60,667 nucleotides of DNA from Girardia tigrina. Lineage: Eukaryota. The translations under genes and the position numbers were made by a program. The notes under the pieces were generated by a model. The model saw only the letters and a program-made list of their open reading frames with translations. It was not told the DNA's origin and searched no databases. Shown piece after piece: positions 17,791 through 53,191 of this stretch; position 1 is the first letter of the stretch, and each line of letters begins with the position of its first letter. Location of the stretch: NCBI GenBank assembly GCA_001938485.1, contig MQRK01233013.1:12265-72931 (forward strand), in the 5' to 3' direction.

Positions 17791-18090
17791 GTTAAATGTG
17801 AATGTCAATCCAAAATCAATGAATTTCTATGCAAAAATTTGTCCGAAATTTTAAGTAAATCGTGCGATATCAAATTAAGAAGAATCAAAATTCAGAATCT
17901 TCATAATATAACTAAAACATATGATAAAAGTACATCACATTTTATTGATTGTCCTTGTAAACCGATACCGCAATCCGCCACTTCCTTGTCTCCGATGAAC
18001 AACAGGGTCTTTTCTCCCTTTAATACTCCATCAGCGAAAGGTAAAACGGCTTTCTTCCCACCTCAAGATCAGACAACACCTAGAATTCGA
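17791..18090 (+). CDS. Phase-0 exon, CxC..HFxxC repeat 1
   Basis: aaatag|GTT..CGA|gtacg; 100 open codons: VKCEC..YDKSTSHFIDC.. Confidence 0.65.
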
Positions 18091-18603
18091 GTACGAATGA
18101 TTTTTATTTACAAGAGCAACAAATAAATGCATCAAATATTATAATTTAATATAATTATTAAAATTAAAATATATAGAGTTGATAATTAATAACATGAGAC
18201 GAATAAAGTTATATAGCGAATTATATATTATTTGATGCGGAATATGATAGAGAAGCTTTTAATTCAGAGAACATCAAGAGCCAAAGATCTATTCTTCATA
18301 AAGTCACAAAAGGTCTCTTATGATAACAGTGATAATGAAACTCCGATTCTTTCAATAGAAACTGTTGTCACAAAAAAAAATTATAAATGCGAAATGGTTT
18401 TTAAAACATTCTCAATAAAGATGAGCGATGGTTAGAGATGTTCGTATATGGTTTTGATCACTATAAGATTCAGGAAAAATGGAGAAGTTTCAGAGGTCAT
18501 TTGTACGAAGCATTTTAAAATGTCAGCATAAAAAGGAGCATGGCCGTGATAGCGAAAGTGATTCGTATTTAATTACCTTTACTCATGAAGAATTTTACTT
18601 AAG

Positions 18604-18803
18604 CTGAGATCAATCATAAACCATCGAACCAAACTGAAGCACACACAATCATTGTAAGACCATCTCTTGGAAGACAAAGTAGTTTGAAAAGACTATCCAA
18701 CAGGCTTAGTCTTTCTAAACAAAAGCCAAATCATAAAATTTTTGTTAAAGAAAAGGTTGATGGGCAGGCTCCTCAAACTTCATTGTTAAATGAGACTCCA
18801 GTG
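18604..18803 (+). CDS. Probable exon of the same gene (Ser/Lys-rich linker)
   Basis: Open frame EINHKPSNQTEAHTIIVRPSLGRQSSLKRLSNRLSLSK..ETPV ending at gtg|gtagtt, then a 42-nt intron. The 5' boundary is uncertain. Confidence 0.45.
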
Positions 18804-18845
18804 GTAGTTATATTCATTAACAATCTTAATTACTCTTTATCTTAG

Positions 18846-18890
18846 ACAAATCCAGTGAATATTCATTCCGTTTCGTCGCCAGAACAAACG
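18846..18890 (+). CDS. 45-nt microexon A
   Basis: cttag|ACAAAT..CAAACG|gtattt; TNPVNIHSVSSPEQT. Confidence 0.6.
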
Positions 18891-19028
18891 GTATTTTACA
18901 CGATTTAAATATTATTTTATTTTTAATTAATTGTAATTGAAAATTAATTTGAATGCTTTCTACAAACGAATACAAGTGTAACAGTTGTAATCCCTATAAA
19001 CTATAACTTTAATCATTCTTTTTCATAG

Positions 19029-19073
19029 ACAAATCCTGAGAATATTTCTACAATTTCGGCACCAGGACAAACG
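19029..19073 (+). CDS. 45-nt microexon B (duplicate of A)
   Basis: catag|ACAAAT..CAAACG|gtattt; TNPENISTISAPGQT. The downstream intron is also duplicated. Confidence 0.6.
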
Positions 19074-19494
19074 GTATTTTATATTATTTAAATATATTTA
19101 AAAATTTTAATTAATTATAATTGAAAATTAATTGGAATGTTTTTTAAAACTAATAAAAATTATAGTAGTTGTTATTTCTTGTGGCAAGTGCTTATTTCCC
19201 TGCGACTTAGTTGAGCTAATAACGTAAAATATGGAGGGTATTAATTTATCAAATATTTTCAAAATCTGTTTCGTTGAAGCCTCCAAATTTGTTTTAAAAT
19301 TCAATCAACTTGTTTCTTTAGGCCCACTGAAACGCATTTTTCTTGTTTTAATAGACGACACATTAGATAAATAAAAATTAAAGTCATAACGCCATTTAGT
19401 AGAATTTATTAGAGTGATTAATTTCGGCGGATTACCTACCATTCTCAGACTAAATCAACATTAGCATTGGCAGTTTATACATTAAAGTAATGAA

Positions 19495-19890
19495 TATGTA
19501 ATTAATTACCACGTTTTTATTAGCTTGCTTTCTTGTCTGTTTGTCTGTCTGGAACAAATCTTGCGATTGATTTTTCGACCACTTTCAGTCATCCAATTGA
19601 GCTGAATTTTTTTATACAGGCTTGCTTCCGATGACAATACAATTTGATAAAAAATATTTTGAAAAAAAATTCCTAAATAATAACTAAAAATAGTAAAATA
19701 ATATTATTAATAAAAAAAATTTTTTATAAAAACAACCACGTTTTTCAAGCATTACCAATGCACTAAAAAGAGGAAAATAACTTTTTTCTAGACATGTGAG
19801 AAATTTTATATCTAACCAAAAACGTGGGGCATAGAAATGATCGATTGTTACTAAAAAGCAGTAAAGAGGAAATAGCAGTTACTAATAGCA
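19495..19890 (+). mobile_element. Helentron/DINE-like non-autonomous element
   Basis: GTCT/GTTT microsatellite followed by CCAATTGAGCTGAA core typical of HINE/DINE-like repeats. Confidence 0.45.
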
Positions 19891-20766
19891 GTAATTCAGA
19901 NNNNNNNNNNNNNNNNNNNNNNNNNNNNNNNNNNNNNNNNNNNNNNNNNNCGCCCCACGTTTTTGGTTAGGTATAAAATTTCTCACATGTCTAGAAAAAA
20001 GTTATTTTCCTCTTTTTAGTGCATTGGTAATGCTTGAAAAACGTGGTTGTTTTTATAAAAAAATTTTTTTATTAATAATATTATAATGTAATCAGCTTCT
20101 ATTTACAAATGTTTCATAGAGATATTGAGAGTGAGGTTTGAACATTAAATGTCGGATTCATTTACCTTATAAATAACACCTTGGATATCGCACTCACCCA
20201 TGAACTTTTAAATCAACTACACGGAATCTTTAAATCATTTTCTTCTATTTTAATTTTACAATGAAAAATGTATGTATTTGCAGTGATTTTAAAGGTAGAC
20301 GTTGGTGTGTGAGTGCTTGTTTGATATGTATGTTATGTGATTGGTGAGTGCATGTTTGTGTAATTAGAAGAAATGCATTAATTTATTAATTAATGATACT
20401 TGATGTTTTGCCACATACAAACCAGTAAATCAAAAAATTAAATTTTTTATATCCATTCTTTATGCAGACAGAATTCTACTTTACCAACAAAGTATTTAGA
20501 ATTAAAAAATTTAAAAATTAAAAAATTTTAATTAAAAAAACACCTTAAAAATTAATATAAAGTAATAATTTATAAGTAGATATCTTGCAATTAATATTCG
20601 GGAACTCCGAATTTTCCGTTTTTTCCCATTTTTGGATCTTAAAATTTTTTTTTCGATGAAAAGTTTACATAATCATAAATTGTCATCGAGTATGAGTAAG
20701 TGTGTAAAGTTTGAAGGAAATCGATTGAGTAAAAAGCCTTCAAAAACAGGTTTCTAAATTCCATGG

Positions 20767-20809
<43 letters not shown>

Positions 20810-20839
20810 AAGCTAATAAAAAGAATAGAAAAAGAACTA

Positions 20840-21265
20840 GATTTACTACTCCACTGGTTTATGTTCAAATTTCGTTTATCAATATAAATTTAATGGGTGT
20901 GATGCCATATACATCGGATAGACTTGTTATCACCTCTGTAAACTTATTTAGGAATATAATCACAGGGAAAGTGATAGCAACATATCGCTCAACATAAAAA
21001 GAACTGTTTCAATAGTTGATGTAAATAATTTTAGGATATTGTGTTCACAATTTGGTAATTACTGGAAGAGGGTGAGGTGTGAAGCAAATCATAAAATCAA
21101 TGTGCAAACATCATCCTCTTCAACTATATTGAAAGTATTTTCATGATTTATATTAGATAAGGATTACATAAACATTACTTTGATGTATAAACGCGAGTAT
21201 ATCATTGTTAATTTTAGTCTGATGATGACGGTCGATCCGTCGAAGTTAATAGCAATAAATTCTGA
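20840..21265 (+). mobile_element. Penelope-like 3' end with hammerhead-like motif
   Basis: VYQYKFNGCDAIYIG*TCYHLCK..FRILCSQFGNYWKRVRCEA, then CTGATGA-T-GACGG..CCGTC-GAAG at 21219-21245. Confidence 0.8.
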
Positions 21266-21999
21266 TGAAAGTTTTTGTTTTTTAAAAATAGTTTATCGTC
21301 ATTTTTTAAATATTTATATAAATGCAATATATACTTTAATTGATAAAAGTGAGAGTTTTTGCAAAGTTTAATGAATTTATGAAATCATAAAAGCAATGAT
21401 ACTGATGTTGAGTCAAAAATGAAAGATTCAACTCTAAAAAGAATAGCGCCAATTATTGAAGTCTTAGATAATGCAGAATTGAATTGATTATTTATTATTC
21501 ATTCAAATTATAAATCTCAAGTTTACTGATAAAAGGAGTAATTCGTAAAGTCGATGGTAAATAATTGAAAAATGATAAGAATGATAAGCATATCTTAATA
21601 AGTCAAAATTACTGACTTTAAAGTAAGAGATGTGATTTTGCAATTAAGAATTAATAATTAGATCAAATGAATAAAATGATAAATTTAAACAAAAGGAATT
21701 GAACTGAAAAACTTGTAAAATATTTATAAGCGCAGGTAAAATAAACGTTCTGAAAAATTTTTAAAGAAACTTTAAAAATCAATTTTTTAAGAATATAATT
21801 TACAAAATTATAAATTTGAATTTTTTGACATATCGAGAACTTTTTTGATTTAATACATTGTTATTGCTTATCTTATAATGAATATTTATATGAATACAAA
21901 TATTGACATTGATTACAACATGAATTATCGATTTGATTTGACGAGATCTCCAACGTTGATTTACAATATCACACTGTCTCCTGCAAGATTCGTAAAACG

Positions 22000-22210
22000 T
22001 GGTGGGCCTCCCATCTCTTTCGAATGCTATTGAGCCTCTAGGCTCTTTAGAGGGTCCACCAAAACTAAAGAATCACTAGCAGCCCCCCGATAGGCCTCTT
22101 ACGGGGTCGGATAGTTTCGGTCTCCAAGATCTTTTTGGCCTCCCTATGAGAAACAACCATACATGGACCGTACAGCCATGGTTCTGCATACATCTGAACT
22201 CTCCCCTTAC
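22000..22210 (-). mobile_element. Structured terminus of a probable non-LTR retroelement (copy 1 of 3)
   Basis: Clear sequence similarity to 59037-59200 and weaker similarity to 47593-47695; conserved stems. Confidence 0.6.
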
Positions 22211-23189
22211 AGTTAGATCAGCAAAAGAATTTCTTTTTTGGTACTTTCTTTTTTCTTTTTTTCTTTTTTTATGATACTACTACTGCTGACGCTAGTATAT
22301 GCGATTGTTTTGACTCCATACATGACATTTTAGATATTAAAGATCCGGAAATTGATGAAGACATTGACAAATAATGTTCATGAAAATTACCAAAGAAAAA
22401 TGAAATCACTGTTTTTAAAACATAAGTAAATACAGATGAATACAATTAATAAATTACAACAAGAAATGATAAGTTCTGGAAATAATTTATTTTTAAAAGA
22501 ATAGAATTAATTTTCATGAAAACTTTTACGAAACATTTTTCAAAGATTTAATATATTTAAAAATAAATAAACTAAATAAATACATTTCGTGAGAAGTGGT
22601 TGCAACCTCAATATCAGGATTAATTTTTTTAACACCAAAATTTAAAAAATTTAAACAAATTAAAAAATATTTTATTTTTAAAAACGTTTTTGATTTTTTA
22701 ATAGTTGTTTTATTATATCATTTTTAATTTTAAAATATTGACTAAGCATATTAACATAAAAATATTTTCCCTTTAAATTAAAAAATAATAAATTATTCAG
22801 GCGAGATAAAAATTTAAATTAAGCCCTCATACATTTTATTCCGAAAGTTTGAGAGGAAACATTTTAATCATTCTTGTTTTATTTGAACGGACTTTATCCA
22901 TGATAGAGTCAGTTTCTTTGAGCATTGTCTTCACCGTCACCACCTTCATATAGTCAAGTAAATAAACTGTGGATGATGAATTAAGTCCATTTACAACCCT
23001 TATTTATGACAATCGTCCTTGTCCACGATAAAGTAACAGTTCAATTAATCTTTCGACAGATTTATTCAATTTTGTCAATCAAATTTTGTTTGTAAGGATT
23101 TTTAAGGTACTGGAAAGATAATCGAATTTATTTTATTAAAATATCAGTATTTAAAATAAAACATCAAAAATTTATTTTTGATAATTTAG

Positions 23190-23285
23190 ACTGAAAAATA
23201 TGAGAAACTTAGTGATAACGCCATGTATATGGACGAAGAAGAGGACGATGAACACTGCATCTATTTCGAAGTGGAAGACATTAAA
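23190..23285 (+). CDS. Phase-0 exon upstream of repeat 2
   Basis: atttag|ACT..AAA|gttgat; TEKYEKLSDNAMYMDEEEDDEHCIYFEVEDIK. Confidence 0.5.
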
Positions 23286-23689
23286 GTTGATTATATTTTT
23301 CATTAAATACTTTTTATTTTCTTTTAATGTAAAATGTTACAAATAAAAACTAGTGTTGTATGTGAAAATAAGAACAAAACTGTACGCAATAATCTTTATT
23401 TCATGATTTCAAAAAAAACATGTACAAAAAATTTTAATTATTAAAACAAACTTATTTTCTTCTTTTTAATAATTGGTTGATAGTTCAAATTATTTTTTTT
23501 AAACCATTTATGAGAGAATAATAAGATTAGGAAAAAATATGAATAAATAAATTTTTATTATTGTTTTCTTAATTTAATACAAATTTAAATAAAAATGTGG
23601 AGAATGAGAATCTGAATAACACAAAATTATATTTGAATAATACTGTCCTCTTGCTATTCAGTGATTTAAACAAACGAATTATTTATTTA

Positions 23690-25690
23690 TCCCACACTCC
23701 CTCTTGCCCTTCAGGCACATACGCACACGCACCCCGTGCACTGAGGAGTACGGCCAGTCTCTGTGCTCGTCTGTCCGGTGAAGACAAAGTCCTTGGGAAG
23801 CTAAAAGCTGGCCTCAAACAGCCGCCGACTGGAAAATTGCCCACTATCTGACCAACAAGAACAGATTCTGTCGCGTCAATCAGTGGGGCAATTTCGGAAC
23901 CCTGCCGTCCCGGTACCATTGCCACTCTCCGTTAGTCTCTCGGACCGCGAACCTTCCTCTGTTTTTTTTCATAGGTGATTTTGTTTCAAGCCTGAAACTG
24001 TTGAAGACCGTAACTACATGCTCTGCCGACACCTTCTCAGTGTCGACTATGACGTAGTCGTAGTAAGATTCTGCGGTCCTTGCCACCATCTCATCGGATA
24101 CCAAAACGTGGTTCATAATACGCCTCATGACTTTTTGGTGTCACGTTCAGTCCAAAGTCACATTGTGTGCTGCACCACTCCTGCCCGCAACTTTTATCGT
24201 CTGATAAGGCTACAGGTTTTCATCCACTTTGATCTGGAGGTACGCCCATCGTAAATCGATTATCTCCAGATTTTTTCCTATTTGCCACCATTTGCGCAGT
24301 TTCTTAGCACAGACCAGGCTCTCTGTGGTGTGATTCGATACAAATTCACCGCTCGATAATCCGGGACCGGTCTCACTTTTCTTTTGATCACCTGCACTGC
24401 CGCAATTAGCGGTAATATCACTTTTGAACGGGATGAGCCACCCGTTTTTCTTCCAATCTGATAGCTCCTAGTCTACTTCTTCTTCGTACTGCTTTGTAGA
24501 CGCATATGCAGCAGCTTCCTTGGTCATTTGTTCAGGTGCGACGTCATTCTTCCATCTCTATGCCATGATCCACCAGCGGCCATCGAACTTGACCAAAAAA
24601 TCTGCATCCTCGATCTGGGTATGCCTCGGTTTCTTAATCATGCTCACTGCTGCTAGATGCTCGATGCGTCCAAAACTTGGGGTGCCCCTTTGCTTGGCAC
24701 CTATACTCCCCCAAGTTGACTGATTGTCTCCATGCCGAGAAGGATGTCAGTCCTCGACGAGATGATTTCCGGCACCACTAGGACGTGGCAAACGATTTAC
24801 TTCACATTGCACTTGATTGGTATTGTTGCTCTGAATTGCACATTCACCTCTGATCCGTTCATCATCTGCATCGATCCATAATGCGGACCAAATTTGATGG
24901 TGGAACCACCGATTTTGCTACGACTGTTGTCGAACAGCCCTTATCAATCATTGCTCTACTTTCCTTCCGCGCATGGTCGCTGGGATAATTGTTAGTCACG
25001 CGTCTCCATATTCAGGCCCCCCACCCGAGCAGCAGTGGACCTTTTGTCCGTTTCCTGCTGATTTCCGNNNNNNNNNNNNNNNNNNNNNNNNNNNNNNNNN
25101 NNNNNNNNNNNNNNNNNCCCCGCCATAGTCCCTGACGATGTGACCTATGAGGCCGCAACTGAAGCCATTCCGCCCCATTGGCCCCCTTGCTTTGATGCTC
25201 GTTTGGTTGTGAACTGAGCACATTGCTTTCCTGTTGTGCATTCGCGCGCCATTTACCCACCCCCACCGCAGCGGTAACATGTTAATTCCTCGATTGACAA
25301 CGAGATTTGAGCCGGTTTACCGCAAGACTGACCGACCGCCACCACTTTCTCAGCGACACTGTCTGTTGTCTTAACAGGCCAACCGAACCAATCGGTTTAA
25401 TTCTTTTACCCTTCCAAACGCCTCAGCTTCCACGCTTTTCATTGCCGCTTCTGGCAGCCGGTTTATGAAAGCTTGGGTCCCAAAAGCCTCANCCGCCGCA
25501 AATTAAGAACCGCTAACCGCTTCAAGTCTGCCATAAAGAAATCGACCTCTCTCTGGGTACCAGCTGTCTGGAAGCAAAACATGTCCACGACAATCTCTGG
25601 CTTGAGGTGAAAGCTTCTGTGAGCGCCGCTGCGCTCTTCTCGAGATCCTGTCGTGTAATTTCTCCAAAGAAGATTCTCCAAAATTGATTC
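23690..25690 (-). mobile_element. Ty3/Gypsy element remnant (GC-richer family)
   Basis: Gag knuckle FSCGLIGHIVRD, protease-like AMIDKGCS, RT start (WKKNGWLIP), integrase tail and a polypurine tract GAAGGGCAAGAGGGAG before TG at ~23695. Confidence 0.75.
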
Positions 25691-26210
25691 TCCAAAAGAT
25701 GAATGTCGGTTGCGGCAAGGTTTGTAACTAAAAAGAAATGAAAGAATTTGCTGGAAAACAAAATTTTGAAATTCAATTCTCCAGCCCATATCGCCATAAC
25801 TTAAACAGAAAAATTGAACCACAATTTCCTCCAGTGAGAGAAATGATGAACAAAACATTGTATGAAAGAAGAAGTTGGACTGGGACAGAAATATTACCTG
25901 AAACCGAGTTCTTCTTAAATGCCAACTTACAGGTGACAATTAGAATGAGTCCAGCTGAAATCATTTTCGGAATATGCATTAGCATTGGATGGAAGAAGTT
26001 TTGAAGCAGTTCAACAAAACCGGGATCAGGAGGTAATAACATGACGAAATTTCTTCCAGAAGAAGTTATGATAAAGGTGGAATCTAGAACAAAAGATCTA
26101 GAAAAATACATCGGACAATAGAAAGTAATTCGAAAAGATATGTATGGTATAATATAGGAAATAAATCCGGGGAAAATTAAAAAATTCTTGGTTGCGAAGA
26201 TAAAAAGGAT
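25690..26210 (+). mobile_element. Gypsy integrase remnant
   Basis: IQFSSPYRHNLNRKIE..WTEILPETEF..MSPAEIIFG. Confidence 0.75.
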
Positions 26211-26521: not shown

Positions 26522-26797
26522 AATGACGCTTGTGGATGTAATATCAAAAGATTAGACCTCTCAGTTGATTTTATTACTGCAATTCTTGTAAATCGTAAAT
26601 CCGATGCTTTAAAGATTCGTCTTGAGTCGGAGAAATATGATGAAAAAACGAAACATTTTAAAGACTGCTCTATTCGTTCTCCTTTTCCAAAGCCAAAGAA
26701 TGAGGCTCTGGCGAGATCCAAAACCGCAAGTGAAACATCTTTACATTCTCTAACCCATTGTAATTCAATTTTACAGAATTTTTTAGAATTTGATAAA
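26522..26797 (+). CDS. Phase-0 exon, CxC..HFxxC repeat 2
   Basis: ttctag|AAT..AAA|gtaaga; 92 open codons: NDACGC..YDEKTKHFKDC..ILQNFLEFDK. Absent from the ORF track. Confidence 0.7.
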
Positions 26798-27724: not shown

Positions 27725-28372
27725 TTTAGGATAATATATTTCGACAGTTTAACCGTCATCGTCAAATCACTGATTATGTTCTTTTTTATTGCTTTTATAT
27801 AAGAAATGAATGATTATATAATCACTTACGTAAGTCTAATCGAAAACTCTTAACAAATTAGTTGAGAGTGCTGTTTGAACATTGNNNNNNNNNNNNNNNN
27901 NNNNNNNNNNNNNNNNNNNNNNNNNNNNNNNNNNNNNNNNNNNNNNNNNNNNNNNNNNNNNNNNNNNNNNNNNNNNNNNNNNNNNNNNNNNNNNNNNNNN
28001 NNTTATGCTCAGCAATATTACTCTTTCCCCCTTTTTGATTGTGTTCTTGGACTCGTTTGCAGAGATGACGGGCAGTCTCTCCGATGTATGTGGCATTGCA
28101 CCCATTACATGTGTATTGATAGTCAATGTCCGAACACAATCCTAAAGGAGTATGTTATTTATTGCAAAACATATTCTCAACTTTAAATGATTGAGAAATA
28201 ATTTTTAAATTTAAAATGTTATCTGTTGATTTCAAGATCGAATTCTTGAGGTGTTTAAAACCCTCGGAGTAAGGTAAGCCTAGAGTATACCCGGGTGTAA
28301 ATCAGTTTTCAATGTTTAAACTATTAATTTTTTCATTTTTGATTTTTTCTTTTTCGATTATTTTATCTACAC
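27725..28372 (-). mobile_element. Inverted 3' segment (pLTR) of the adjacent Penelope-like element
   Basis: 28003-28372 is the reverse complement of 29409-29613 + 30290-30430; YQYTCNGCNATYIGETARHLCKRVQEH; hammerhead at 27769-27730. Confidence 0.85.
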
Positions 28373-30430
28373 CTACGAATATTTAAACAAAAATTTAAAA
28401 CAAAACAATAAAGATTTTTGTATTTTAAAAAATATATCTAAAAAAGATATCAGTGTTAGTAAATTTGATAAAGGTAATGGATTTGTTATCTTGGATAATT
28501 TAGAATACATAAATAAAATGAATAATGTTTTAAATTGCCACAATTTCTTAAAATTGATAAATTTAGAAAAAAATGGAAAATTACCTCCAATGAAAGATGA
28601 AGAATACTTGTTCTTGTTGTTATAAAACCTTTTAAATGATGGACACATTACGAAGGATGTTTTTGACTTACTTCATGTGTCTGGTTCTCAACCAGCAAAA
28701 TTATACGGTCTTCCTAAAGTACATAAAGATGGAGTTCCAATGCGACCGATTCTATCTATGATCCGTACGTTTCAGTACAATATTGCTAAATATCTAGATA
28801 CGAAGATAAAATCTTTCATTCCTAATGATTTTATTTGTAAGGACAGTTTTGATGCTACTTCAAATGTCTATTTTCTATTTAATGGTGAATGGTACAAACA
28901 AATAGATGGGGTTGCAATGGGTTCACCATTGGCTCCGACGTAAGCCTCTATATTTCTTTCTTCCATTGAAGAAAAAATAGAATTGTTTTTGGGGAAAAAA
29001 CCACTACTTTATAAGAGATATGTGGATGATATATTTCTAGTCTTTGAATCTCGAGAACATGTGTTTCCTTTTCTAGATTACATGAATTCGATTCATCCAA
29101 ATATAATCTTTACAGTAGAACAGGAAATAAACGGAAAANNNNNNNNNNNNNNNNNNNNNNNNNNNNNNNNNNNNNNNNNNNNNNNNNNNNNNNNNNNNNN
29201 NNNNNNNNNNNNNNNNNNNNNNTACACCTCCATAAACAGTTTTTGTGAGTTTAAATATAAAAGGAATATGATCAAAAGTTTGTTATACCGCTCTTGGTCT
29301 CTTTCTTCCACGTTTTCAAAATCTATTAAAAGTATTGATACATTGAGCAAGTTATTGAATAATAACGGTTACTCTAAGTCCATCATAGACAGACTCACTT
29401 GTGAGAATGTGTAGATAAAATAATCGAAAAAGAAAAAATCAAAAATGAAAAAATTAATAGTTTAAACATTGAAAACTGCTTTACACATGGGTATACTCTA
29501 AGCTTACCTTACTCCGAGGGTTTTAAACACCTCAAGAATTCTATCTTGAAATCAACAGATAACATTTTAAATTTAAAAATTATTTCTCAATCATTTAAAG
29601 TTGAGAATATGTTTGTTGAGTGTTAGTTGTGTTTTATTATATTCAAGAAGAAAAGTCTGGTTTTATTTATAAAATTTATTTTGTATGTACAATTTATTAC
29701 AATTTTTAATAAGCTAAAGATGTTGAAAGAACAGAGTTTATTTTTCCCCTGGCTGATTTTATATTTAAACTTCGAGAGTCTTTAGCGACAACTCGAATAA
29801 CTGTATTTGAAAAGTTTAGAACGCACTTTCCAGCACGTTTATATATCTATATATATTTACATATATAATTGATATGATAAATTTAAAAATCTTTTTCAAA
29901 AAAAATTACTTTTTTTAAGAAATTATTTCAATGTTTTAAAATATTTGTCAAAAACTTTTCAGTTTTATTTTATTTTATTAACATCTATTCATTTTTTTCG
30001 ATCTTTATATATATATATCTGGATGACGGATGTTTATCCAAAAAAAGTTTAAAATTATAATTAAGACCTTCTATATTATTATAGATCAATATTTGATCTA
30101 GTAAATTAACTGGATGACGGATGTTTATCTAAAAAATAATTATCCAAATTATAATGACCTTCTATATTATTATAAAAAATTAAAATTATAATTAAGGTCA
30201 AACTGACCTTCTATATTATTAATTAATTTTATTAATTTAAATTTTTTATATTTTTATTTATAAATTTTAAAATATTACCTCAACATGTTTTGCAATAAAT
30301 CACATACTCCTTTAAGATTGTGTTCGGACATTGTTTATCAATACACATGTAATGGGTACAATGCCACATACATAGGAGAGACTGCCAGTCATCTCTGCAA
30401 ACGAGTCCAAGAACACAATCAAAAAGGGGG
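28373..30430 (+). mobile_element. Penelope-like element, RT + GIY-YIG (interrupted by a solo LTR)
   Basis: KFDKGNGFVIL, LYGLPKVHK..PMRPILS, QIDGVAMGSPLAP, RYVDDIF, then VYQYTCNGYNATYIGET after the insertion. Confidence 0.92.
29614..30285. mobile_element. Solo LTR
   Basis: TGTTGAG..CTCAACA termini with a 4-bp TSD (TGTT). The empty site (gaatatgttttgc) is preserved in the inverted copy at ~28165-28177. Confidence 0.85.
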
Positions 30431-31153
30431 TGGAGCGGAAAATTGCCAATTTTGATCGAACATTTATTTTTGCCAGTCTCAGTATATAAATAATCTGAGA
30501 ATATTATCAACTGACTTTTCGATTTTTTCAAAGAATTGTGAGCAATTCTCATCCGATTTACGGAAACGTAACGCAGCTTCCAGATCTACTGCTAAATTTT
30601 TTTTGGTTTAAACGCTTTTCGGAGTCGGTCTTCAAATCCTTCAGTTGTGCTTTGGGTTTCTTCATATTGGGTTACTAATTCGATTGACAAGAATGCTTTT
30701 GTCAGAGTTTCCTGAAATTCTGGAGGCTGTTGCGTGAGCTCGAAGAATCTTTTTAATTCCAGAATAAAATTATCCAGGTCTCCGTTTCTCTGAAATGTTT
30801 CTGGTGGTCTGATAAAATTTTGTACTCTGGTCGTGGTCGCCATGTTAAAAGACAAGATGCTTTCCTAAGATATATTAAATAATACAATAATGAACTAAAC
30901 ATTCAATTGACATATCTTATATATCAGCACACCTCAATCCGGTTGCATAACTGGATTAGGGAGATCTGCTGGGTTAGCATCACATGATTGACACCGCACA
31001 CTATTACATGCATACATTATATCATCAAACTCTCAATCATGTTACTCAATTTCATGATTGAGTAATAATGATAATAATATGTTTATAATAATAATCTCAA
31101 TAATAATTAACAACCATAATAATAATAATAATAATAATTCACACATCCTTACA
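30431..31153 (-). mobile_element. Gypsy 5' LTR + PBS + gag
   Basis: LTR TGTAAG..TTAACA (31153-30843), PBS TGGCGACCACGA (complementary to a tRNA-Arg(UCG)-type 3' end), gag MATTTRVQNFIRPPETF.. Confidence 0.8.
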
Positions 31154-32520: not shown

Positions 32521-33449
32521 TTTTAAAATTTAGTATATGAATATTAAATTGTTTTAACGATTTTTAAAAGGTATATTAACTTTAAATGAAAAACATTTAA
32601 ATAAAAATTTATTTTATTAAAGTATTATTGGGTAATAATAGCAATTAAAATTTTAAGTATTGAAATAACCTTATTTTACCCATTCTGAATGTTAATTGAT
32701 GGGTTGTAGTGTTTTATTAGTAGAGTTTTCTGTTCTACAAAAGGGATTTGATTCACTTTACGAACGATAGTTTTGTGAATAACATCAACCTTTATAGATT
32801 CTATACGTAAAACATATAAGTAAAATTGTGTAAATATAGAGTTACTAGGAATTGGCTAATAAAATGGTAATAAAGTATGTGATATGATAGTCGAAAAGTG
32901 TAAGTGTGTGAGGAAAAGCTATATAAAGCTGTACAACTGGTCTCAGAGAGTGACCTCTTTGTGATTATATACACTAAAGATGGATAAAACCAGAAAAAAA
33001 TTGAAGTACAGCACATAACGTCTGTAAAAGAGCTAACTGAAAACGTGTTTCAGTTAACTCCTTTAACATAACAAAAAAATAAAGATAAATATAAAACTTT
33101 TATTTTACACAATATAAATAAACATATATAACAAAAAAATCACATACGAGAGAGAGAATGACATGGATAAATCTCGATTTCGATTAGTGTTTATTGTTCT
33201 AAGGTTTCAAAGGAACGATCTTCTGTTGTAACAATTTCGATGGAAACGTCAGAGAATCATTTGGTTGCACAACGAGAATTTGAGGAAATAGATATTATGA
33301 AGAGATGCATTTTCAAGGAAATATTGATAAATTGGTTTGCAGAAAATTCCTTTACGAACCGATGCTACAGGAAAATGTTTAGTAGGTAATATAATATAGT
33401 TGTAATCCGTAATATTAATGATTGTTTTTATTGATCCTCGTTTTATATA

Positions 33450-34003: not shown

Positions 34004-34291
34004 ATTGAAATTAGAATTTGCATTCAGGTCAAATGTCCCGAAGAAAGAATTATTGATCTTATAAAAACAAAAGATTATAACGAATACAATATGGTGTTAT
34101 TGAATGTGATCAATATTTCAGAACCTTCACCAGAAATGTTGAGTCTCTTTTTCTATGTGACCCGAGCAATTATTAGACACATTGATGATCCGCGTTATGA
34201 GAATAATGAAGATATTAAGAAAATATTTAAATTCTCCGAAAAGTATCTCGAAAAAACATTTTTGACCGCAATTCAAAAACATTGCAATTTA
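34004..34291 (+). CDS. Phase-0 exon, DH(RhoGEF)-like helical segment
   Basis: aaag|ATT..TTA|gtaagt, 96 open codons: EERIIDLIKTKDY..SPEMLSLFF..DIKKIFKFSEKYL. The acceptor is weak. Confidence 0.55.
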
Positions 34292-37400: not shown

Positions 37401-38770
37401 GGTCATATTGCACTTTTTTAAATTAGTACCTTTTTTCTCTTTGGTTTTTGTATGCATGGGATTTTGTCAGTTTGGGATTTTTGTTTTGGGCTTTTGTCAG
37501 AATGGTATTTGTCCATTGGGCTTTAGTCATGTAACTAGTTATATCGCGCATACAAGCCGCAGCGTAACTGTCAAAAAGTGCATTTTAAAAAAACTCTGAG
37601 ACTTATGCGTGCTTGCGAGTTATCTGTGCAATAATACGGTAGTTTTATCTGTATCTATTTAAATGCATTTCTTTTTATTTGTTAATTTTATAATATATAA
37701 ACTTATCAAATTAATATTTTAATTATGCTCGAATAGTCAATTAATGTGAATACAAAGAAACAATTTCCATCTGGGCGGAGAATCACCATTTTAAGTTCAA
37801 AATACTCAAATCAACATACAGCATTCATACATTTACACATTCAAACAATTTAAAATATTCCTCACAGCATGTATAATTATTTTTTTCTCTTATGTTTCAC
37901 ATAATATGTGATTTTTCATTTTAATGCATAAATTAGAAATCTATAACGATGTAAATAACCAGAATTACACCGCTAAATCATTTTTATGGTTGATCGCTTC
38001 TTATAATGATGGTACAAATTTTGAAAACAATGGATCGGTTTTTGCTTTTTAATCTTCGTGCTTCGTTTCGAGAGGAATTTTTAACTTTGATTATATCATT
38101 CTATCATAACTGAAAGTTTTATTGCAAATCAAGCACATTGGATTTTTGTTATATGATGTCAATTCCATTAAACTTTGAATCAAGTAATTAATCAGTGACC
38201 GGAAGATGAAGATTGATCCGTCAAAATGTATTGCAATAAATACATTTTGAAATAGATAAATTTTGTTTATAATAAAAAATGTTAATCCAGCTTGATTTTT
38301 AAATGGTTTTTCTAATTGTTACATCTTTTTATGTAATTCAATTTGTTATCATCATTAAATATCCAGTCGTCATACTGGTATTTATGTAATAATTCTTTAA
38401 ATTATAATTCTTTAGTAATTCTAAATAATAGTTCTTTATTAATTCGGTATTTGTAAACCCATTTGATTAAATACTGAAATATGTTTCCATTCAGATGCAT
38501 TATTTGTCTAAATACGGGGAGGTAGAATGATGATATTCGAGCCATGTCCTTTCGAGTGGTTGTTCTTGACGCAACTTGCTGTTATAGGATTTTTTCATCA
38601 TACTCTATTTTCATGTTTTTTTTAATAAATTTTTTTTGAGATTTTATTTATTTTTTATACTGCTTGATTGTGCATTATTCTAAAGGATTTAATAATTGTA
38701 AGGAATTTAAAAGCAACTAGTAATGAATTAAACTTATATATTATTTCTCGATTTCGTAAAAATCAAAATA

Positions 38771-40045
38771 TTAGGTTGATCGAAAAATAATGGCGGTTTT
38801 TGAGCTTTATACTTTGTTTATCTACTTTTATCTACTATGTATATAAGTTTAAATGCATTAGTGTTAGATATTATTTGAAATCTTATGCCTAGCTGTATAT
38901 TCCTATAGCCATTATTAACATATTGCTGTTATTTTTTAGAATATTTACGGTGCTAAATTAATAATGGAGAAAATTAAAATTCAAGCAATTTTCTTGTACG
39001 AATTTAAACAGCAGAAACGGCTCACAATATCAATAAAGCGTTTGGAAAGGAAACAGCTTCTGAGCGCACAGAGCAACGATGGTTCCGAAAATTTTCTGAT
39101 GGAGATGAAAACCTTGAAGATGAAGAAGGTCGTGGTCGTCCAGTTGTTGTGAACAACGACAATTTGAGGACAATGGTGGAAACAGATCCCCGTACAACAA
39201 TCAGAGAACTTGCAGATGGGTTTGGCATTAGTCATTCAATAGTCCCGGATCATTTAAAACAATTTGGAAAAATAAAGAAACTTGAGAAATGGATTCCACA
39301 TGATTTGAATGAAAATCAAAAGAACCGACGCTATGAAATTTGTTCTGCCAATCATCTTCGCAATAAAAACGATCCATTTCTTGATCGTATTGTTACCTGT
39401 GATGAGAAATGGATCCTGTATGATAACCGACGTCGATCTGCACAGTGATTGGACAAAGATGAAGTACAGAAACACTTTCCAAAACCGAAACTAACACCCT
39501 GTAAGGTTATGGTGACAGTTTGGTGGTGTGAAGCTGGAATTATCCACTATAGTTTCTTGAATCCAGGTGAAACAATCACAGCGGAGAGGTACTGTCATGA
39601 AATTGATGAAATGCATAAAAAATTGAAAACCCTTTGCCCGGGATTGGTCAATAGAAAAAGTCCCATCCTTCTTCATGATAACGCTAGACCTCATATTTCA
39701 AAGTGACTCTTCAAAAGCTTAATGAGTTAGGCTATGAAACCCTGCTTCATCCACCATATTCACCAGACCTCTCGCCAACGGACTTCTACTTTTTCAGGCA
39801 TTTGTACAACTTCCTACGTGAAAAGATTTTCAAAAACCAAAATGATGCTCAAAATGCCTTCCAAGAATTCGTCGCTTCGAGAACCGATGCATTTTATGCT
39901 GATTGAATAAACAACTTGTTTCGTGTTGGCAAAAATGTATTGATGCCAACGGTTCATACTTTGATTAATAAACTTTTGTTTCTGTGAATTTGCACGTCTT
40001 TGAAGTTTGTGTCCCAAAACCGCCATTATTTTTCGACCAACCTAA
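38771..40045 (+). mobile_element. mariner (DD34D) transposon, full length, frameshifted
   Basis: TIRs TTAGGTTGATCGAAAAATAATGGCGGTTTT / AAAACCGCCATTATTTTTCGACCAACCTAA with TA flanks; WIPHDL, TCDEKW, HDNARPH, YSPDLSPTD. Confidence 0.95.
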
Positions 40046-42791: not shown

Positions 42792-42852
<61 letters not shown>

Positions 42853-45060
42853 NNNNNNNNNNNNNNNNNNNNNNNNNNNNNNNNNNNNNNNNNNNNNNNN
42901 NNATAAACTCGACTTCTGATAAGACTTCTGTCCAATCTTTATGATCTCCATCCTTCATTCTAATATTCAAAGCATCTCTGATCGTGCGAAACTGTCTTTC
43001 CACGATTCCCTTTGTGTTATGATGATATGGACTCGAATAAAACACCTCAATTTTAAATTTTTTCGTCATGTCCTTGAACAAAGCCGATTCAAATGTTTTT
43101 CCTCTGTCTACGTGGATTTCTTTTGTTTTGGTTGTTAATGTCTTCCTTTTCTGACAATTTATGCAACTTTGAACTATTTTTTTTTATAAATTCTCTAATA
43201 TTTTCCATGTCGAAATTATCTCGGAGGTAGTTATAGATCTTTTTACAACCTGCATGACACAACAATTTGTGTATTTCTTCAATAAAATTTGCTCGTTCTG
43301 CCTTTGGAATCCAGTATTTATTATCTTGATTTATGACGATATCATTCTTTAATGCCAATTTTTTGTTCTACCTTTACTTATGTCCTCGATTATTTGTTTT
43401 ATTTCATTAATATTCTTCTCCCATTTAATACCATCTGATTCTTCACTTAATGCTAGTATTCTTGTTTGAATCTTTCCTTTCTTGGCCTCTTCATGCATTG
43501 TTTGACACTGATTGCATAGTTCGCACGAATTTCTTGACATTGTATCAGCGTTTAAATGTTTTTCACCTTTTCGATATTCCATTTTCATGTCAAGACTACT
43601 CAGAAAATTTATCCATGTTTGGAACTGTGGTATGATAGAGTTCTTTGTAGTCATCATAAATGTAATAGCTTTAAGATCTATTCGCAACAAAAATCTTTTT
43701 CCATACAAGAAATATTTAAAATGCTGTGTGAAATAATAAATTGCAAGTAGTTCTTTCCTTGTAATGCAATAGCCTAGTTCATGTTCATTCATTTTATGTG
43801 ATCCATTCGCAATCACCCTTTCTCTTTCAAATTCGTCTTTCTGTGATAACACTGCCCCTATCGTATCAAAACTTGCATATGTATCAAGTATGAAGTCTTT
43901 GGTAAAATCAGGGTATGCCAAAATTGGAGTTTTAATCATTCTTTCTTTTAGTTTTAAATCTAAAAGAAAGTCCAAATCAGTTTCTTATCCTTATTTTTAC
44001 TTTATAAGCCTTCCAATACTTTTGCATATCTTGCGTAATCCTTTATAAATTTTCTGTAGTAATTTGTCAAACCCAAAATGCTCGTAAATGTTTAATGCAT
44101 GATGGACTTTGAAACTTGCTTATCGTGTTAATCTTTGATTTATCTGTTTCAATACCATCTTTAAGTATGATATATCCTAAGAATTTAGTCTTTTCTAATA
44201 AAAATTGACATTTATTCTCAAAGCTGATTGTTTAATCTTCTCAAATACGTTATTTACTCTTTGAAGATGTTCTAATTATACTTGATGGTAAGCGTTTCCC
44301 AAATCGATAGTACTAAAGTATTTTACCTCATTTCGTGTATTCAACATATCGTCTACATTTGTCATTGGAAACGCTGGTCAGCTGGTTATTTTATTTAACT
44401 GACGAAAGTCTACACATACTCGAATATCTTGTTTTTACTTCTTGCACACACATACTACAGGAAAGTTCCAAGGAGAACAACACTGTTCGATAATGTCGTT
44501 TGCTTCAAAATGTTTTATAATATCATCTAGTTTCTCTTCAAAATGTTTCAGTTATCTATATGGTTTTACGAGTACTGGTTCTCCATGTGTTTCTATCTTG
44601 TGTTTGGTTAACGAAGTTTTTCCAATATCCCATTTATCAGCCATTAATATTGATCTGTACTTTGTTAAAAGTACCATTAGCTCATTTTCACTTGTAGTAT
44701 TGTACAATTCTCTTATTCTTTTCAATCTATCTTCATCAGAAGGGCTATCTCTAATAGCCAATATGCTATCGATATTTGATACTTCTTTCTTCAATTTTAT
44801 TCCAAATTTATCCAAAAATCTATACCAGCAATCATTTCTGGATCTATTTCTTTGACAACATAAAATTCTATTGTTTTCTGTACCCTTTCTATTATTATCT
44901 TTAATTGTACAGTTCCATAGTTTACAAGTTCTAAGTCATTCGCACAGTGAATATGCTTTCTTAACTCTCTAATCTGAATCTTTTCCATACCTTTGATTAA
45001 ATCCGCTTTAATGATATTCACTCGGGCTCCTGTATCTAAAAGGCACTGAATATATCTATA
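42700..45060 (-). mobile_element. Ty3/Gypsy pol (PR-RT-RH-IN), decayed
   Basis: LLDTGARV, SPWNFPVV, RVCVDFRQLN, PILAYPDFTKDFILDT..GAVLSQ, ITRKELLA, HKLLCHAG, SSPYHH..VERQFRT. Confidence 0.92.
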
Positions 45061-47420: not shown

Positions 47421-47592
47421 CCACAGTCGGCTGATTTAATGTTTTTTTTATAAAAATTAACAAGTAATGAAAAACCATCAAAAATTTAATCAAATTCAAA
47501 ATTATTTATACACGTATATTAAAATTTCATCAATTTACAATTTTATTGCTTAATGAGGCTAAGAAGTTTTTAATAAAAATAATTTATTCCCA

Positions 47593-47700
47593 ATGGAGCG
47601 TTCCCTATCTCCATTATGGTAACTAGCCTTAGACTCTTTAAAAGGTTCATCAAAGTGAAGAGTCTTTCAGTCTCCAATAGATCTCCTATTAGAACGACAG
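47593..47700 (-). repeat. Structured terminus, diverged copy 2 of 3
   Basis: Aligns to 22002-22108 and 59037-59138 with the same stem order. Confidence 0.5.
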
Positions 47701-48284
47701 ACATTTGCTTGAGTGCTAGACAAGATCAACCCAAGTCATTATGTGCATGACTGACCCTAACTTCAGCTGTGTTTGTCGGATTTACAGAAACAGATATCTG
47801 AGCATTTTTTCAACATTTATAACTGAAATCTGAACTTCATTTATGTTTTCGTATTCCTTTCAATCGTTTCTATCTCAGCGACATTCGTGCACTCTTTTGT
47901 GATCTAATTTCTCATAGATTATATTCATTATATTCATTTCCAGACATCTGCTCTGTGTGATTTTGAGCTAAGATGAGATTGAAAACCTTTGGCCTGGCTC
48001 TGATGATGGGCGGTCCCATATCTTCTATTATCAATTTTATTGACAAATAAAAGTGATTAGTGATAAATTGTATTTTTCACGAATACCACTTCAATCGTAC
48101 TTTTTAACACATTTTAACATCTTTTTAATTAATTTGAAGTTTTTTTCTGTATACATATCTGTGTGTTTAGGGTTCATCTAAAGATACGACAAATAATATA
48201 TTCTTCTCCATTGCTTGTATATCTTCTATTGATAATTGATATATAATTTCAGTATTAACATTTTTATTATATTTTATATTTTAG

Positions 48285-48527
48285 AATGCACTTTGCGATT
48301 GTCAAGCTACTGTAGACGAATATATTGAACTTGTCCTGAAATATGTGGCTGATAATGAAGCTCCGAGTGATTCAGAAGTGCGTCGTATTATCGTAAAATT
48401 GGAATCCTTCGACCATGAAACGAGGCATTTTGCGAGTTGTGCAATTCTTCAATCAAAGATCATTTCATCGGTCAACACCTATAAGCGTCAAGTTCCTTAC
48501 GACCTCGAAACACTCAAAATTATTCAG
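48285..48527 (+). CDS. Phase-0 exon, CxC..HFxxC repeat 3
   Basis: ttttag|AAT..CAG|gtttga; 81 open codons: NALCDC..FDHETRHFASC.. Confidence 0.7.
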
Positions 48528-49509
48528 GTTTGATTCAAAATAATTCTGTAGCTTGAAATATTGAATGATTTATTTTTATTAGGATTTTTGTAATAAGTTT
48601 TCACTTTTATTCAATCTGCAAATAATATAAAATTAAAAACCCTTTTGTATTTCTGAGGAATATTTTACATTCTATGAATGTATTAATAATGCATGTTGAA
48701 CTTAGAATGGTGATTCTCCACCCAGATGGAAATTGGTATTTTTTATATTCACTATTCGAGCATAATTAAAATAATAATTTCATATTTTTTATAATTTTAA
48801 TAAGTTTATATGTGTTTAAAATTAACAATTAAAATCAAATTTAATATTTTTTAAAAAAGAAAAACATTTAATTACATATAAATAAAACTAATAAAATTTA
48901 AATTAAATTCATTTTTAACAATTTTTGATAACATTTTTATTATTTTGAGTTTTCATAAATAAATAGCTAAAATTATTATTTTTAATTAATACTTTTATAA
49001 ATTAAATATTTTAAAAAGATTTAGAAAATTTTTCGAATAGTCATTATTAAAAAGAGAAATAAAAAACCAATTAAATTGATATCAAACGGTGAACGATGTT
49101 CCGAGAGTTGTGACGAATCTTAATATGATAATAACAAATATTCAAATAATAATTTTTTCAATGTTCTTAACAGTATTGATTACGGATTTTCTCACGGATT
49201 GAAACAGCCATGTAAAACTTGAAACAGTTTGAGAAATAGGAAGAAATTAAGTAACCTAAAATTATATTATTGGTAGTAAAAAAATTTTCGGTCGTTTAAT
49301 AGTGGCTAAAAGTGCATTTCTTTAAAGAAAATGAATGAACGGATTGATCAAGGGAAAAGATTGATTGTCTATCTCTGGCTTCTTCTTTTTCAACTCAATA
49401 TCGAAAAGGGGTTTCGTCTTTTGAGAGGATTCATGTACGGAATAACAAGTCAATTTCTGCAAGTGTAAAACGGTTACCTGCCAACCAAAACGTTCATAAG
49501 TAGAAGCGC

Positions 49510-49830
49510 CAAATCGTAGCAGCACATAATATACCAATATCTTTTGATTCCACTAGATAATAAGCATTACATTCGAACCATAAATATTCAGCTTTGCAGT
49601 TGATGACAACGCTAGACTGACTATAACGTAGTATTTTTCTCAGAGTTATCATAGAATATTCATTTTTCATCCATAGTTACAATCCGATGTACAAAATATT
49701 TTTATCTTCCCTTTGAAATAGACGCTCTCCAGTGAAACATTGCCGTTCAGCGTCACTCTATTTCAGTTCATAAATAATTATTCTCCAGGATTTAGATCAA
49801 ACATAAACTATTAATTGTTAAAATCTCAAT
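49510..49830 (-). mobile_element. mariner remnant
   Basis: IVTMDEK*IFYDN..STAKLNIYGSNVML..WNQK..VYY. Confidence 0.7.
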
Positions 49831-50307
49831 AGTTTAAAAACTTAATGTTCAACGAGCACCTGGGACACATGTAATCCCTTTGACAACGCTCCTTTTTTCA
49901 TGTAACTCCCCAACTGTCCATCAAAGCGAGTCCGGTCTGATACTGGGATAAATGACTCGCAATGATGGTTTTCGGTACCAGATGCCATCCATGTGTCATT
50001 GCTTCCATGGAAACCTGACCGATACCGAAATAATGTCCATAATTTTTTAATCCGAGCGGTGTATCCATCTCATCACCATGGTATATCCATGAAGCCGCTT
50101 CTTAAAACAATTGGAATTTTCCGAAAAAATGAAATTTAATTATTATTTTTTTGACATGAACCATTTGGGATGATTACAACAATTTTTGATCGCTATCGGT
50201 TCGATAGTTTTAGAGACTATAAAGCACATAATCATACATTCGCTGATATATATATATATATATATATGTATATAGACTATGCAATGAAAGATGTAATGTA
50301 ATAAATT

Positions 50308-50472
50308 GAAAACTGTCACCAGGTTACTTTAAAGAGTTTACTGAATAATAATGGCGAAGGGTTACGTGAACATCTTAACAGTCATTCACAATTATTGTTA
50401 TTATTCATTTCTATGTCCGATAGTTTTTTCAATCATTTTCCTGACCACGTCTCGTACTTGCTTACTGAGATA
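50308..50472 (+). CDS. Exon remnant, DH-like C-terminal helices
   Basis: Open frame ENCHQVTLKSLL..QLLLLFISMSDSFFNHFPDHVSYLLTEI|gtaag; the 5' side is disrupted. Confidence 0.4.
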
Positions 50473-51434
50473 GTAAGATATATTTTCCAATGTACCTGGC
50501 TTCTCACGTCCATAAGAATCATATTTCTGGTGAGTATAGAATTAAAAAAAATTTATTTTATTTTACGGAGTGTTACTTGTAGTATTAATGGATCTTGTTC
50601 TGTCTTTCTGCCATGAAAATTATTAACAATACAATAAGAATAGTATTCTATTCAATACAATAAGAATAAGAATTCTAAATTGAAAATGTCTAAAATATTT
50701 GATTTCATTAGAACTCTTTATTTAGAAATAATTTAAAATTTTCTACAAAAATTGCTTTAATGTTTTTATAATTTTTGGCAGCCGTAAAAGTAATTAGAAT
50801 ATTTATCCATCTATCAGACATCAAAGTGGGCAAGGCTCCATCTAAAGCTAAAACAAAACATATAATACTCACTTCAAATATTTTCTGAAAACAGTTCCAT
50901 TTATATAGTAGACGTAATGGAAATTTATACTCGAATTATAAAACTGTTTGAAATTCGTTTCTATCAGTGTTGGGTTATGTCCAGTTGAGGCAAATAGGCC
51001 GTCAAAACTATATTTTGCAAATTTAACCGTCAAGTACTTCCTTAGTCTCTGTGAGTAGTTAAACCTATTTTTCATTTCTCTGTCAATCGCGCAGCCACTA
51101 GTAACGTAAATGTTGGTATGTCGTAATCAGACACCAATATCGTGCGATTTTCATCGGCGTCGGCGCTTCGGGTGGTTTTTACTGGCTGCAGCATGGTGAA
51201 TTGGGATCTGTTGTAATATACAACTTTAGTGGTTGAATTCTATAAGGATGTCATTGTTAGAAGTTAAAAAGAGTCAATCATAAACGAATACGAGTAACAT
51301 GTTGGCCGTTGAGTTTTGATCACGAATCATTTGAATTTTAAAATGTTTGTTTTTCTATCAACTGTCATTGTTAACTTGCTAATATTTCTAATTTGTAACA
51401 CAAAGTAGGCAACTGTGATAAAAAGATAAATGTA

Positions 51435-52861
51435 CAGGGTTTTTCAATTAAAATCAGAAATGTTTCAATTAAAATCAGAACTTATTTTAAAGATAATTAA
51501 ACTTTAATATTGTTAAAAAATATAAACGTTATAACAACAATATATTCAACATTAATGATACAGTAATTTAAAAATATTTCTTCTTCCTAAGTTTTATTTA
51601 ATCAAAATTCTTCACGTCTCATTGCATTTAAAGCATAACGACAAGTATCATTAAAAAACCCAAAACAATCTTCTGATGTGATTGAATCTTTCCCTGTTTG
51701 AATAACTTCCATCAATTCACTTGCACATACAACATTTTTAGATTTGATTCCATTTTGAAAAGCATTCTTCAATCGGATTTAATTGTGGAGAATACGGCGG
51801 AAGGAATTTTAAAACATGTCCAGCATTCGTAATTGCTTCACAAACTCCACCAACTTTGTGTATTGCGCAATTATCCATTATAATAACCGTTTTTCATAGT
51901 TATTGTCCGCCAAGAAAGAAAGCAGCCTGTTTATAAACGAAATAAAAGTGTTTCCATTATTAGAGCCTTCCAATACTTCATATTTTAACAACCCCGTTTT
52001 ACAAATAGCCGCCGAAATTGAAAAGTTTTTACTGCGAATTGTTCCAACTATTTTCTTAGTAGGCGTTCTTAGCTGGCTTCGTCATAAGATTTTCTCATTG
52101 AACAATTAACACCCGCTTCATCCAAAAAAATAATATCTTCTTCATTTAAAGACAAGTAGTAATTTGCAAACTCAAATCGTGATGCTATACACGATGCTGT
52201 ATTTCGAGATTCTGGGACAATACTTACGCGTTTCAAAGAAAAATTAAATGCTTTTATTGAACGATAAATTGTAGATTTTGAAGCAATAATGTTTTTTTCC
52301 AACGCCAAGTCCTTTTTTAACAATCCAAGTGTTATCAAACAATCAGTTTCGATTTCATTTTTAATAAAATCCACATGTTCATGGTTAAGAATTGGAGTTT
52401 TATAACCACGGGCTGGTAGTGAATTTATTCTACCACTGGCTTAAATTTTCAGAACACTAAAGACAGTTTTATAGTTCACATCGAGCTCACTTGAAATCGT
52501 TTTAAGTGTTTTTCCAGCGTCGTATTTACTGCATATCAATTCGCTTTCACGATTCAAAAGCTGTTTTGTTATTTCGATTAAAACCATGGGCTTAGATTTT
52601 ATTTTGTTATACGAATTATACATGTAAAAATAAATCTAGACGAACAATTTTTCAAGATGTCTTTCAATAATTGCTTTCATAAATAACATTTATAAATTAA
52701 ACGATTAATTTATTTCAAAATTTAATTAAATGATTTGATTTTGATTTCCACATTCTGATGTTAATTGAAACGTTTCTGATTTTATTCGAAACACTTCTGA
52801 TTTTAATTCAAACACTTCTGATTTTAATTCAAACACTTCTGATTTTAATTGAAAAACCCTG
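51435..52861 (-). mobile_element. Tc1/IS630-like transposon with subterminal 21-bp repeats
   Basis: TIR CAGGGTTTTTCAATTAAAATCAGAA; IIFLDEAG, IMDNCAIH, FLPPYSPQLNPIE; (TTCTGATTTTAATTCAAACAC)n at 52754-52850. Confidence 0.93.
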
Positions 52862-53026
52862 TGTAGTAGTATTGTCTATTGGGTAATTCGACTCTGGTTT
52901 CTAATGTCAATTTTTCTAACTTGAAAAACTAAAATAATTTCAGTATATATTATACAATTTCTTAATAGTTTAAGTCATTGTCACTTCATTAAAAAATAGT
53001 ATATATTTAAGAAATCTTAATTTCAG

Positions 53027-53191
53027 CAAGTCTCATGCGATTGTGAAATCCGAATTCAAGACTTAATAACAGATACAGTGAACTATATCAGCTCCAAAAA
53101 TAAAAGCAAAAGTCAAATTCAAAAATTAACAACTGAAATTGGAAGATTTAGCAAAAAGAGTCGTCACTTCGAGGACTGCAAAGTGGGCTAG
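53027..53191 (+). CDS. Phase-0 exon, CxC..HFxxC repeat 4 (probably terminal)
   Basis: tttcag|CAA..; QVSCDC..FSKKSRHFEDCKVG*. Absent from the ORF track. Confidence 0.65.
   Translation, partial: QVSCDCEIRIQDLITDTVNYISSKNKSKSQIQKLTTEIGRFSKKSRHFEDCKVG

What the first reader, a model, noticed from the sequence alone, without database searches (positions are those of the whole stretch)
17791..53191. Four scattered phase-0 exons encode the same unassigned C-x-C..H-F-x-x-C module
Seen: exons 17791-18090, 26522-26797, 48285-48527 and 53027-53191 are all on +, all start after an AG acceptor in phase 0, are open across the motif, and place CxC within the first 3-6 residues. The motifs are VKCEC-x37-YDKSTSHFIDC, NDACGC-x32-YDEKTKHFKDC, NALCDC-x35-FDHETRHFASC and QVSCDC-x34-FSKKSRHFEDC. 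The consensus is CxC-x(38-44)-HFxxC with [YF][DS]xx[TS]x before His (copy 1 one residue longer). Intervening residues have diverged but keep amphipathic-helix character, so the duplications are old and the Cys/His set was conserved. Inference: a C2HC zinc-clamped helical hairpin repeated in one large TE-riddled gene or a tandem array. I cannot match it to a zinc-finger family I know. Two of the four exons are invisible in the ORF track.
Basis: partly seen in the sequence, partly recalled or inferred. Interest (0 to 1): 0.82.

Follow-up and report, generated by a model that had tools for sequence, protein, structure and literature searches.

The report
Hidden zinc-clamped Bcl-2-like gene family
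The four repeated cysteine/histidine exons are the front ends of a family of very diverged relatives of the cell-death regulator Bcl-2, which standard domain searches miss and which seem to lock their first two helices together with a metal ion.

Summary
The four exons are real. The CxC...HxxxC module has at least 13 distinct copies in this genome, with a phase-0 acceptor 1-4 codons before CxC and dN/dS below 1. It has no Pfam or PDB match. On five contigs, and in database protein P0004, it lies upstream of a helical exon. That exon folds like Bcl-2: the top 24 of 48,161 PDB representatives are all Bcl-2-fold. All seven copies end at a phase-0 intron at the BH2 'GGW' position, the family's conserved exon boundary. 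An 11-codon last exon follows, with no membrane anchor. In the window, copy 2 + 34028-34291 + 38495-38530 form one such gene. Copy 1 is probably an extra upstream repeat. Copies 3 and 4 have no core exon here, and copy 4 carries a stop. The layout resembles BID/BFK/BCL-G (two N-terminal helices, loop, BH3-like helix, no NWGR, no anchor), plus a putative Cys3His clamp. Zinc binding, splicing, expression and function are untested. The scan earlier noted a 'Bcl-G-like' gene elsewhere in this genome (s1-691918, unchecked).

The parts
17791..18090 (+). Module exon, copy 1 (distal type: no BH3-like helix at its end); phase 0-0; probably an upstream repeat of gene A
   Evidence: paralog on C98670 has 83% aa identity in the module, dN/dS 0.36
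23190..23285 (+). Acidic linker exon, phase 0-0, between copy 1 and copy 2
   Evidence: homolog L025:5645-5743 (41% identity) lies between the module and core exons of C210279
26522..26797 (+). Module exon, copy 2 (proximal type): CxC, helix 1 (BH4-like position), helix 1', HFxxC, loop, BH3-position helix; phase 0-0
   Evidence: collinear with P0004
34028..34291 (+). Bcl-2-fold core exon (helices 3-7); no NWGR; ends at the BH2 exon boundary, phase 0
   Evidence: dN/dS 0.18 against L047
38495..38530 (+). Terminal exon: 11 codons plus stop (helix 8 position), no transmembrane anchor
   Evidence: best-scoring of 345 AG sites; equivalent 11-codon exons in three paralogs
48285..48527 (+). Module exon, copy 3 (most diverged); phase 0-0; no core exon downstream on this contig
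53027..53191 (+). Module exon, copy 4; TAG where three close paralogs have AAG, and the paralogs' donor is not kept, so truncated or decaying (a weak in-frame GT precedes the stop)

Best explanation
The exons encode the N-terminal part of a lineage-specific subfamily of very diverged Bcl-2-fold proteins. Well supported: exon order module -> core -> short last exon, the predicted Bcl-2 fold of the core, the BH2 intron, and the lack of NWGR and of a membrane anchor. Inferred: the module's two helices are helix 1 (BH4 position) and an extra helix 1', as in BID and BFK, and C, C, H, C at the two ends of the hairpin bind one Zn2+. Most likely mechanism (inferred): a soluble, latent regulator whose clamped hairpin covers the core and the BH3-position helix, and whose release lets the core reach membranes or other Bcl-2 proteins. 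It is unlikely to act as a canonical pro-survival BH3 receptor. Extra module exons are symmetric phase-0 duplicates that stay in frame or decay. Odds: Bcl-2 fold about 0.9; module as helix 1/1' about 0.65; zinc site about 0.75; role in apoptosis about 0.4.
For: Linkage on 5 contigs and in P0004. Core model: the top 24 VIA rows are all Bcl-2 fold, Z up to 8.3 against 6.1 for the first unrelated chain; Foldseek probability 0.99, TM 0.62 to Bcl-xL; the longer model agrees. The C241396 core exon hits only PF00452, positions 29-99 of 100, E 0.099. Seven of seven core exons end in a phase-0 GT at the BH2 position, and two keep G-G there; PMC8998228 describes this boundary as highly conserved. A hydrophobic-x3-hydrophobic-x2-hydrophobic helix sits in register with the donor in 7 proximal exons, nearest to BH3 in C213760. 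BFK and BID have helices 1 and 1', a loop, no NWGR and no anchor (PMC8814693). Purifying selection: module p=0.011, core p=2e-20. All four ligands are invariant in 16 modules, and are kept in the 17th, which changes only the F.
Against: No significant sequence match to Bcl-2. Foldseek E-values are not significant, and Z of about 8 is modest for a helical bundle. AlphaFold did not pack the module confidently on the core (pTM 0.50), and in the core-only model the linker aligns to the helix-1 position. The Pfam BH4 search does not find the module exons. Modules also occur without a BH3-like helix or an adjacent core, which suggests an autonomous domain. Caspase-type Asp sites are not conserved in the loop (2 of 7, none in copy 2). 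No RNA evidence was obtained, and no model coordinates were available to measure ligand geometry.
Confidence: 0.65

Rival explanations
1. The module is an independent zinc-clamped interaction domain attached in one or more copies to a Bcl-2-like core. The proteins are non-apoptotic scaffolds, in the manner of BCL-G or poxviral B14.
For: Tandem modules in P0002; distal copies lack the BH3-like helix; the module is predicted as a separate unit; BH1 and BH3 residues are degenerate; BCL-G acts with TRAPP, apart from apoptosis (PMC10244440).
Against: In five genomic exons and P0004 the module, loop and BH3-position helix precede the core, in exactly the place of helix 1. Helix 1 resembles the BH4 pattern by eye (from memory, not a tool result).
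Confidence: 0.22
2. The resemblance to Bcl-2 is only a common helical arrangement; this is an unrelated lineage-specific family.
For: No significant sequence hit; Z at most 8.3; shallow alignment of 8 rows.
Against: 24 different Bcl-2 clusters rank first; the intron position, the G-G and the weak PF00452 hit are independent of the model.
Confidence: 0.07
3. The family derives from transposons or from retroelement-borne Bcl-2 genes.
For: The locus is full of transposon fragments; earlier unchecked notes report Bcl-2-like domains in retroelements of this genome.
Against: The genes are spliced and keep the ancestral BH2 intron; copy number is low; PF00452 matches lie on other contigs; no clear viral fold match.
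Confidence: 0.03

Closest known systems
BFK (BCL2L15) and BID
   Same: Bcl-2 fold with helix 1 plus an extra helix 1', a flexible loop before the BH3 helix, no NWGR and no C-terminal anchor (PMC8814693). BFK chain 7ccl matches the core model at Z 7.3, rmsd 3.0 over 102 residues, tied with other family members.
   Different: No C/C/H/C clamp is described for them; their ECIxNxLxxxFL motif is not present here; the caspase site is not conserved here; the BH3 small residue is replaced by E, K, R or L; BID is reported only from cartilaginous fishes onward (PMC8998228).
BCL-G (BCL2L14)
   Same: Atypical member with BH3 and BH2 regions, no BH1, and a long N-terminal extension (the extension is from memory).
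   Different: No sequence match; no clamp known; orthology not tested.
Multi-motif Bcl-2 family (Bcl-xL, CED-9, BAK; PF00452)
   Same: Predicted fold, helix order, and exon boundary at BH2.
   Different: Far below the Pfam cut-off (best 13.6 bits against 31.4); lacks NWGR, the BH2 tryptophans and the transmembrane exon.
C2HC zinc fingers (UBZ, MYST, Sgf11 types; from memory)
   Same: Cys-Cys-His-x3-Cys ligand order.
   Different: CxC instead of CxxC, and a 33-44 residue helical hairpin between the ligand pairs; no Pfam or PDB match.

Membership tests
Bcl-2 family | Bcl-2 helical fold | tested here: met
   Predicted model only: top 24 of 48,161 representatives; Foldseek TM 0.62, probability 0.99, E not significant
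Bcl-2 family | Exon boundary after the BH2 GGW position | tested here: met
   7 of 7 core exons, phase 0; definition from PMC8998228
Bcl-2 family | PF00452 score above the curated cut-off | tested here: not met
   best 13.6 bits, E 0.099; family contigs absent
Bcl-2 family | BH1 NWGR motif | tested here: not met
   absent in all 8 cores; also absent in BFK and BID
Bcl-2 family | BH3 motif | tested here: inconclusive
   hydrophobic register kept in 7 exons, Asp in one or two, small residue in none
Bcl-2 family | BH4 motif in helix 1 | tested here: inconclusive
   PF02180 finds no module exon, and nothing over cut-off in the genome; BH4 is weakly conserved (PMC7022251)
Bcl-2 family | C-terminal transmembrane anchor | tested here: not met
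   11-codon last exon in 4 genes; short polar tail in P0004; last exon not found for 3 genes
BID/BFK type | Helices 1 and 1' followed by a flexible loop | tested here: met
   model: helices 13-30 and 33-43, low-confidence loop 65-84; packing on the core not shown
BID/BFK type | Caspase cleavage site in the loop | tested here: not met
   Asp followed by a small residue in 2 of 7 loops
BID/BFK type | Activation of BAK/BAX after truncation | not testable with these tools
   needs an assay
C2HC zinc finger | Tetrahedral Zn site from C, C, H, C | not testable with these tools
RhoGEF DH-PH proteins | PF00621 match | tested here: not met

The most novel reading that the evidence does not exclude
An invertebrate, BID-like class of latent Bcl-2-family switches in which the autoinhibitory N-terminal hairpin is held by a zinc clamp and released by metal loss or cysteine oxidation rather than by caspase cleavage. 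Alternative use of the symmetric module exons could tune it.
Probability: 0.15. Interest if true: 0.85.

Novelty: new variant of a known kind. Interest (0 to 1): 0.63.

Why it matters
Surveys of Bcl-2 evolution rest on BLAST and domain searches, which would not see this family. They place BID in jawed vertebrates and give flatworms a small repertoire (PMC8998228, PMC11463336). A subfamily of at least seven core genes with a BID/BFK-like layout would change that inventory for this lineage. It would also supply candidates for the upstream regulators of BAK. I found no structural zinc clamp on a Bcl-2 protein in the papers searched; only an inhibitory zinc site in a BAK crystal is cited. If the organism is a planarian, the genes can be tested by RNAi in regeneration. 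That identification is my recollection from the assembly size and was not tested.

Tried and rejected
Searches with no informative hit: Pfam on the four exons; three word searches (length-limited); PDB sequence searches; ESM Atlas by features and shape; viral folds. P0003 from the big search is a bacterial LRR protein matching only the HFxxC-like stretch, so rejected. A TAZ-like motif at 60158 is the antisense of a transposon ORF. The 18232-18537 block is not coding in any frame. Module and core are not repeats of each other. The module tree is mostly unresolved. No gap was filled.

Full report
Observation. The four exons translate as reported, follow an AG in phase 0 and carry CxC-x(38-44)-HFxxC. 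The pattern appears four times in the window and never in 100 shuffles. A profile of the four retrieves nine more genomic matches and converges at 13, two of them identical. A more diverged copy was found by hand on C213760. All copies share the acceptor position. Paralog pairs give dN/dS of 0.36-0.77 in the module (pooled p=0.011). The host is an AT-rich animal genome of 1.43 Gb. I recall that size as a planarian assembly but did not test it.

Partner exons. Comparing loci revealed a helical exon at 34028-34291 with six distinct homologs. It lies downstream of a module exon, on the same strand, on five contigs. The search of 1.84 billion representatives returned three true relatives: P0001, whose contig shows the same splice sites; P0002, with two modules; and P0004, which joins module and helical domain in one chain. 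An 11-codon last exon follows at 38495-38530, matched in three paralogs. An acidic phase 0-0 exon at 23190-23285 has a homolog on C210279.

What the helical domain is. AlphaFold modelled P0004:140-260 at pLDDT 79 and pTM 0.72. Among 48,161 PDB representatives the first 24 are all Bcl-2-fold chains, with Z up to 8.3. Foldseek ranks Bcl-xL first, with probability 0.99 and TM 0.62 but a non-significant E-value. The longer model agrees. Two lines of evidence do not depend on the model. One core exon hits only PF00452, along positions 29-99 of 100, though weakly. All seven core exons end in a phase-0 GT at the residue equivalent to the BH2 tryptophan, and two retain G-G before it; PMC8998228 calls this boundary highly conserved in the family. 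NWGR and a transmembrane tail are absent. The core is under strong purifying selection.

What the module is. In seven proximal exons the module is followed by a loop and then an amphipathic helix in fixed register to the donor, which is the BH3 position. The module therefore sits where helix 1 belongs. The model shows two helices and a short beta-hairpin at pLDDT 84-95. [quoted passage not shown] Here the hairpin is flanked by four invariant ligands, which suggests a zinc clamp. This assignment is inferred. Caspase-type sites are not conserved.

The window. Gene A most simply reads copy 1, acidic exon, copy 2, core, last exon, all in phase 0; its start was not found. Copy 2, core and last exon give 191 residues collinear with P0004. 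Copies 3 and 4 have no core exon after them, and the window ends at the contig end. Copy 4 has TAG where paralogs have AAG and lacks their donor. A two-gene tandem array with internal exon duplication fits best.

Gaps. None falls in an exon. 19901-19950 lies between the arms of a 98% inverted repeat. 27885-28002 has a GIY-YIG piece on its right and, on its left, sequence that adjoins the same element elsewhere. 29139-29222 has open flanks in one frame of a reverse-transcriptase-like ORF. Continuity between copy 2 and the core is thus plausible and is backed by the same order on four other contigs. Continuity at 25068-25117 and 42853-42902 is not shown, so the link of copy 1 to copy 2 and the placement of copies 3-4 are less sure.

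Mechanism and rivals. Most likely these are soluble, latent Bcl-2-fold regulators in which a metal-clamped hairpin shields the core, with release as the switch. The main rival is a non-apoptotic scaffold with an autonomous zinc domain, as BCL-G works with TRAPP (PMC10244440). A retroelement origin is unlikely given the ancestral intron.

Limits. Absence from the literature rests on eight searches of an incomplete library. My Bcl-2 reading was noted, before I saw note s1-691918, which may describe another member of the family.

Verdict. Real and conserved: a new variant of the Bcl-2 family with an unmatched putative zinc-clamp module. Interest 0.63.

Noticed in passing
window 18232-18537: Two-copy block, 89% identical to C98670, better conserved than synonymous sites of the neighbouring exon, with no codon periodicity; possibly a regulatory or untranslated element.
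   Followed up: partly
window 21383-21484: Short open frame ending in a helix that resembles the BH3-position helix of P0004 by eye; not detected by the profile and no in-frame acceptor seen.
   Followed up: partly
window 33171-33386: Open frame with a good donor in phase 2, upstream of the core exon; does not fit the phase-0 model.
   Followed up: partly
G000 C239254, C216816, C144380 and others: Thirteen ordinary PF00452 matches over cut-off, many in open frames of 150-220 residues; earlier notes tie such copies to retroelements.
   Followed up: no
G000 C167339:15720-15875, C72448:1398-1499 and three identical copies: Weaker matches to the 3' half of the core exon (E 8e-8 and 0.001); possible further members or bridges to ordinary Bcl-2 genes.
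   Followed up: no
L022:5477-5662 (-): Partial tandem duplicate of a module exon that lacks the hairpin.
   Followed up: no
L012, L013, P0001, P0002, P0004 loop region: One subgroup has an additional CxxC in the loop, perhaps a second or alternative metal site.
   Followed up: partly
window 28000-30450, 39008-39903, 43352-43984, 51700-52635, 59516-60406: Transposon remains: Penelope-like, mariner, Gypsy-type RNase H, Tc1-like and a gag-like ORF (the last two by eye).
   Followed up: partly
window 60553-60667: A short repeat shared with the ends of three other family contigs.
   Followed up: no
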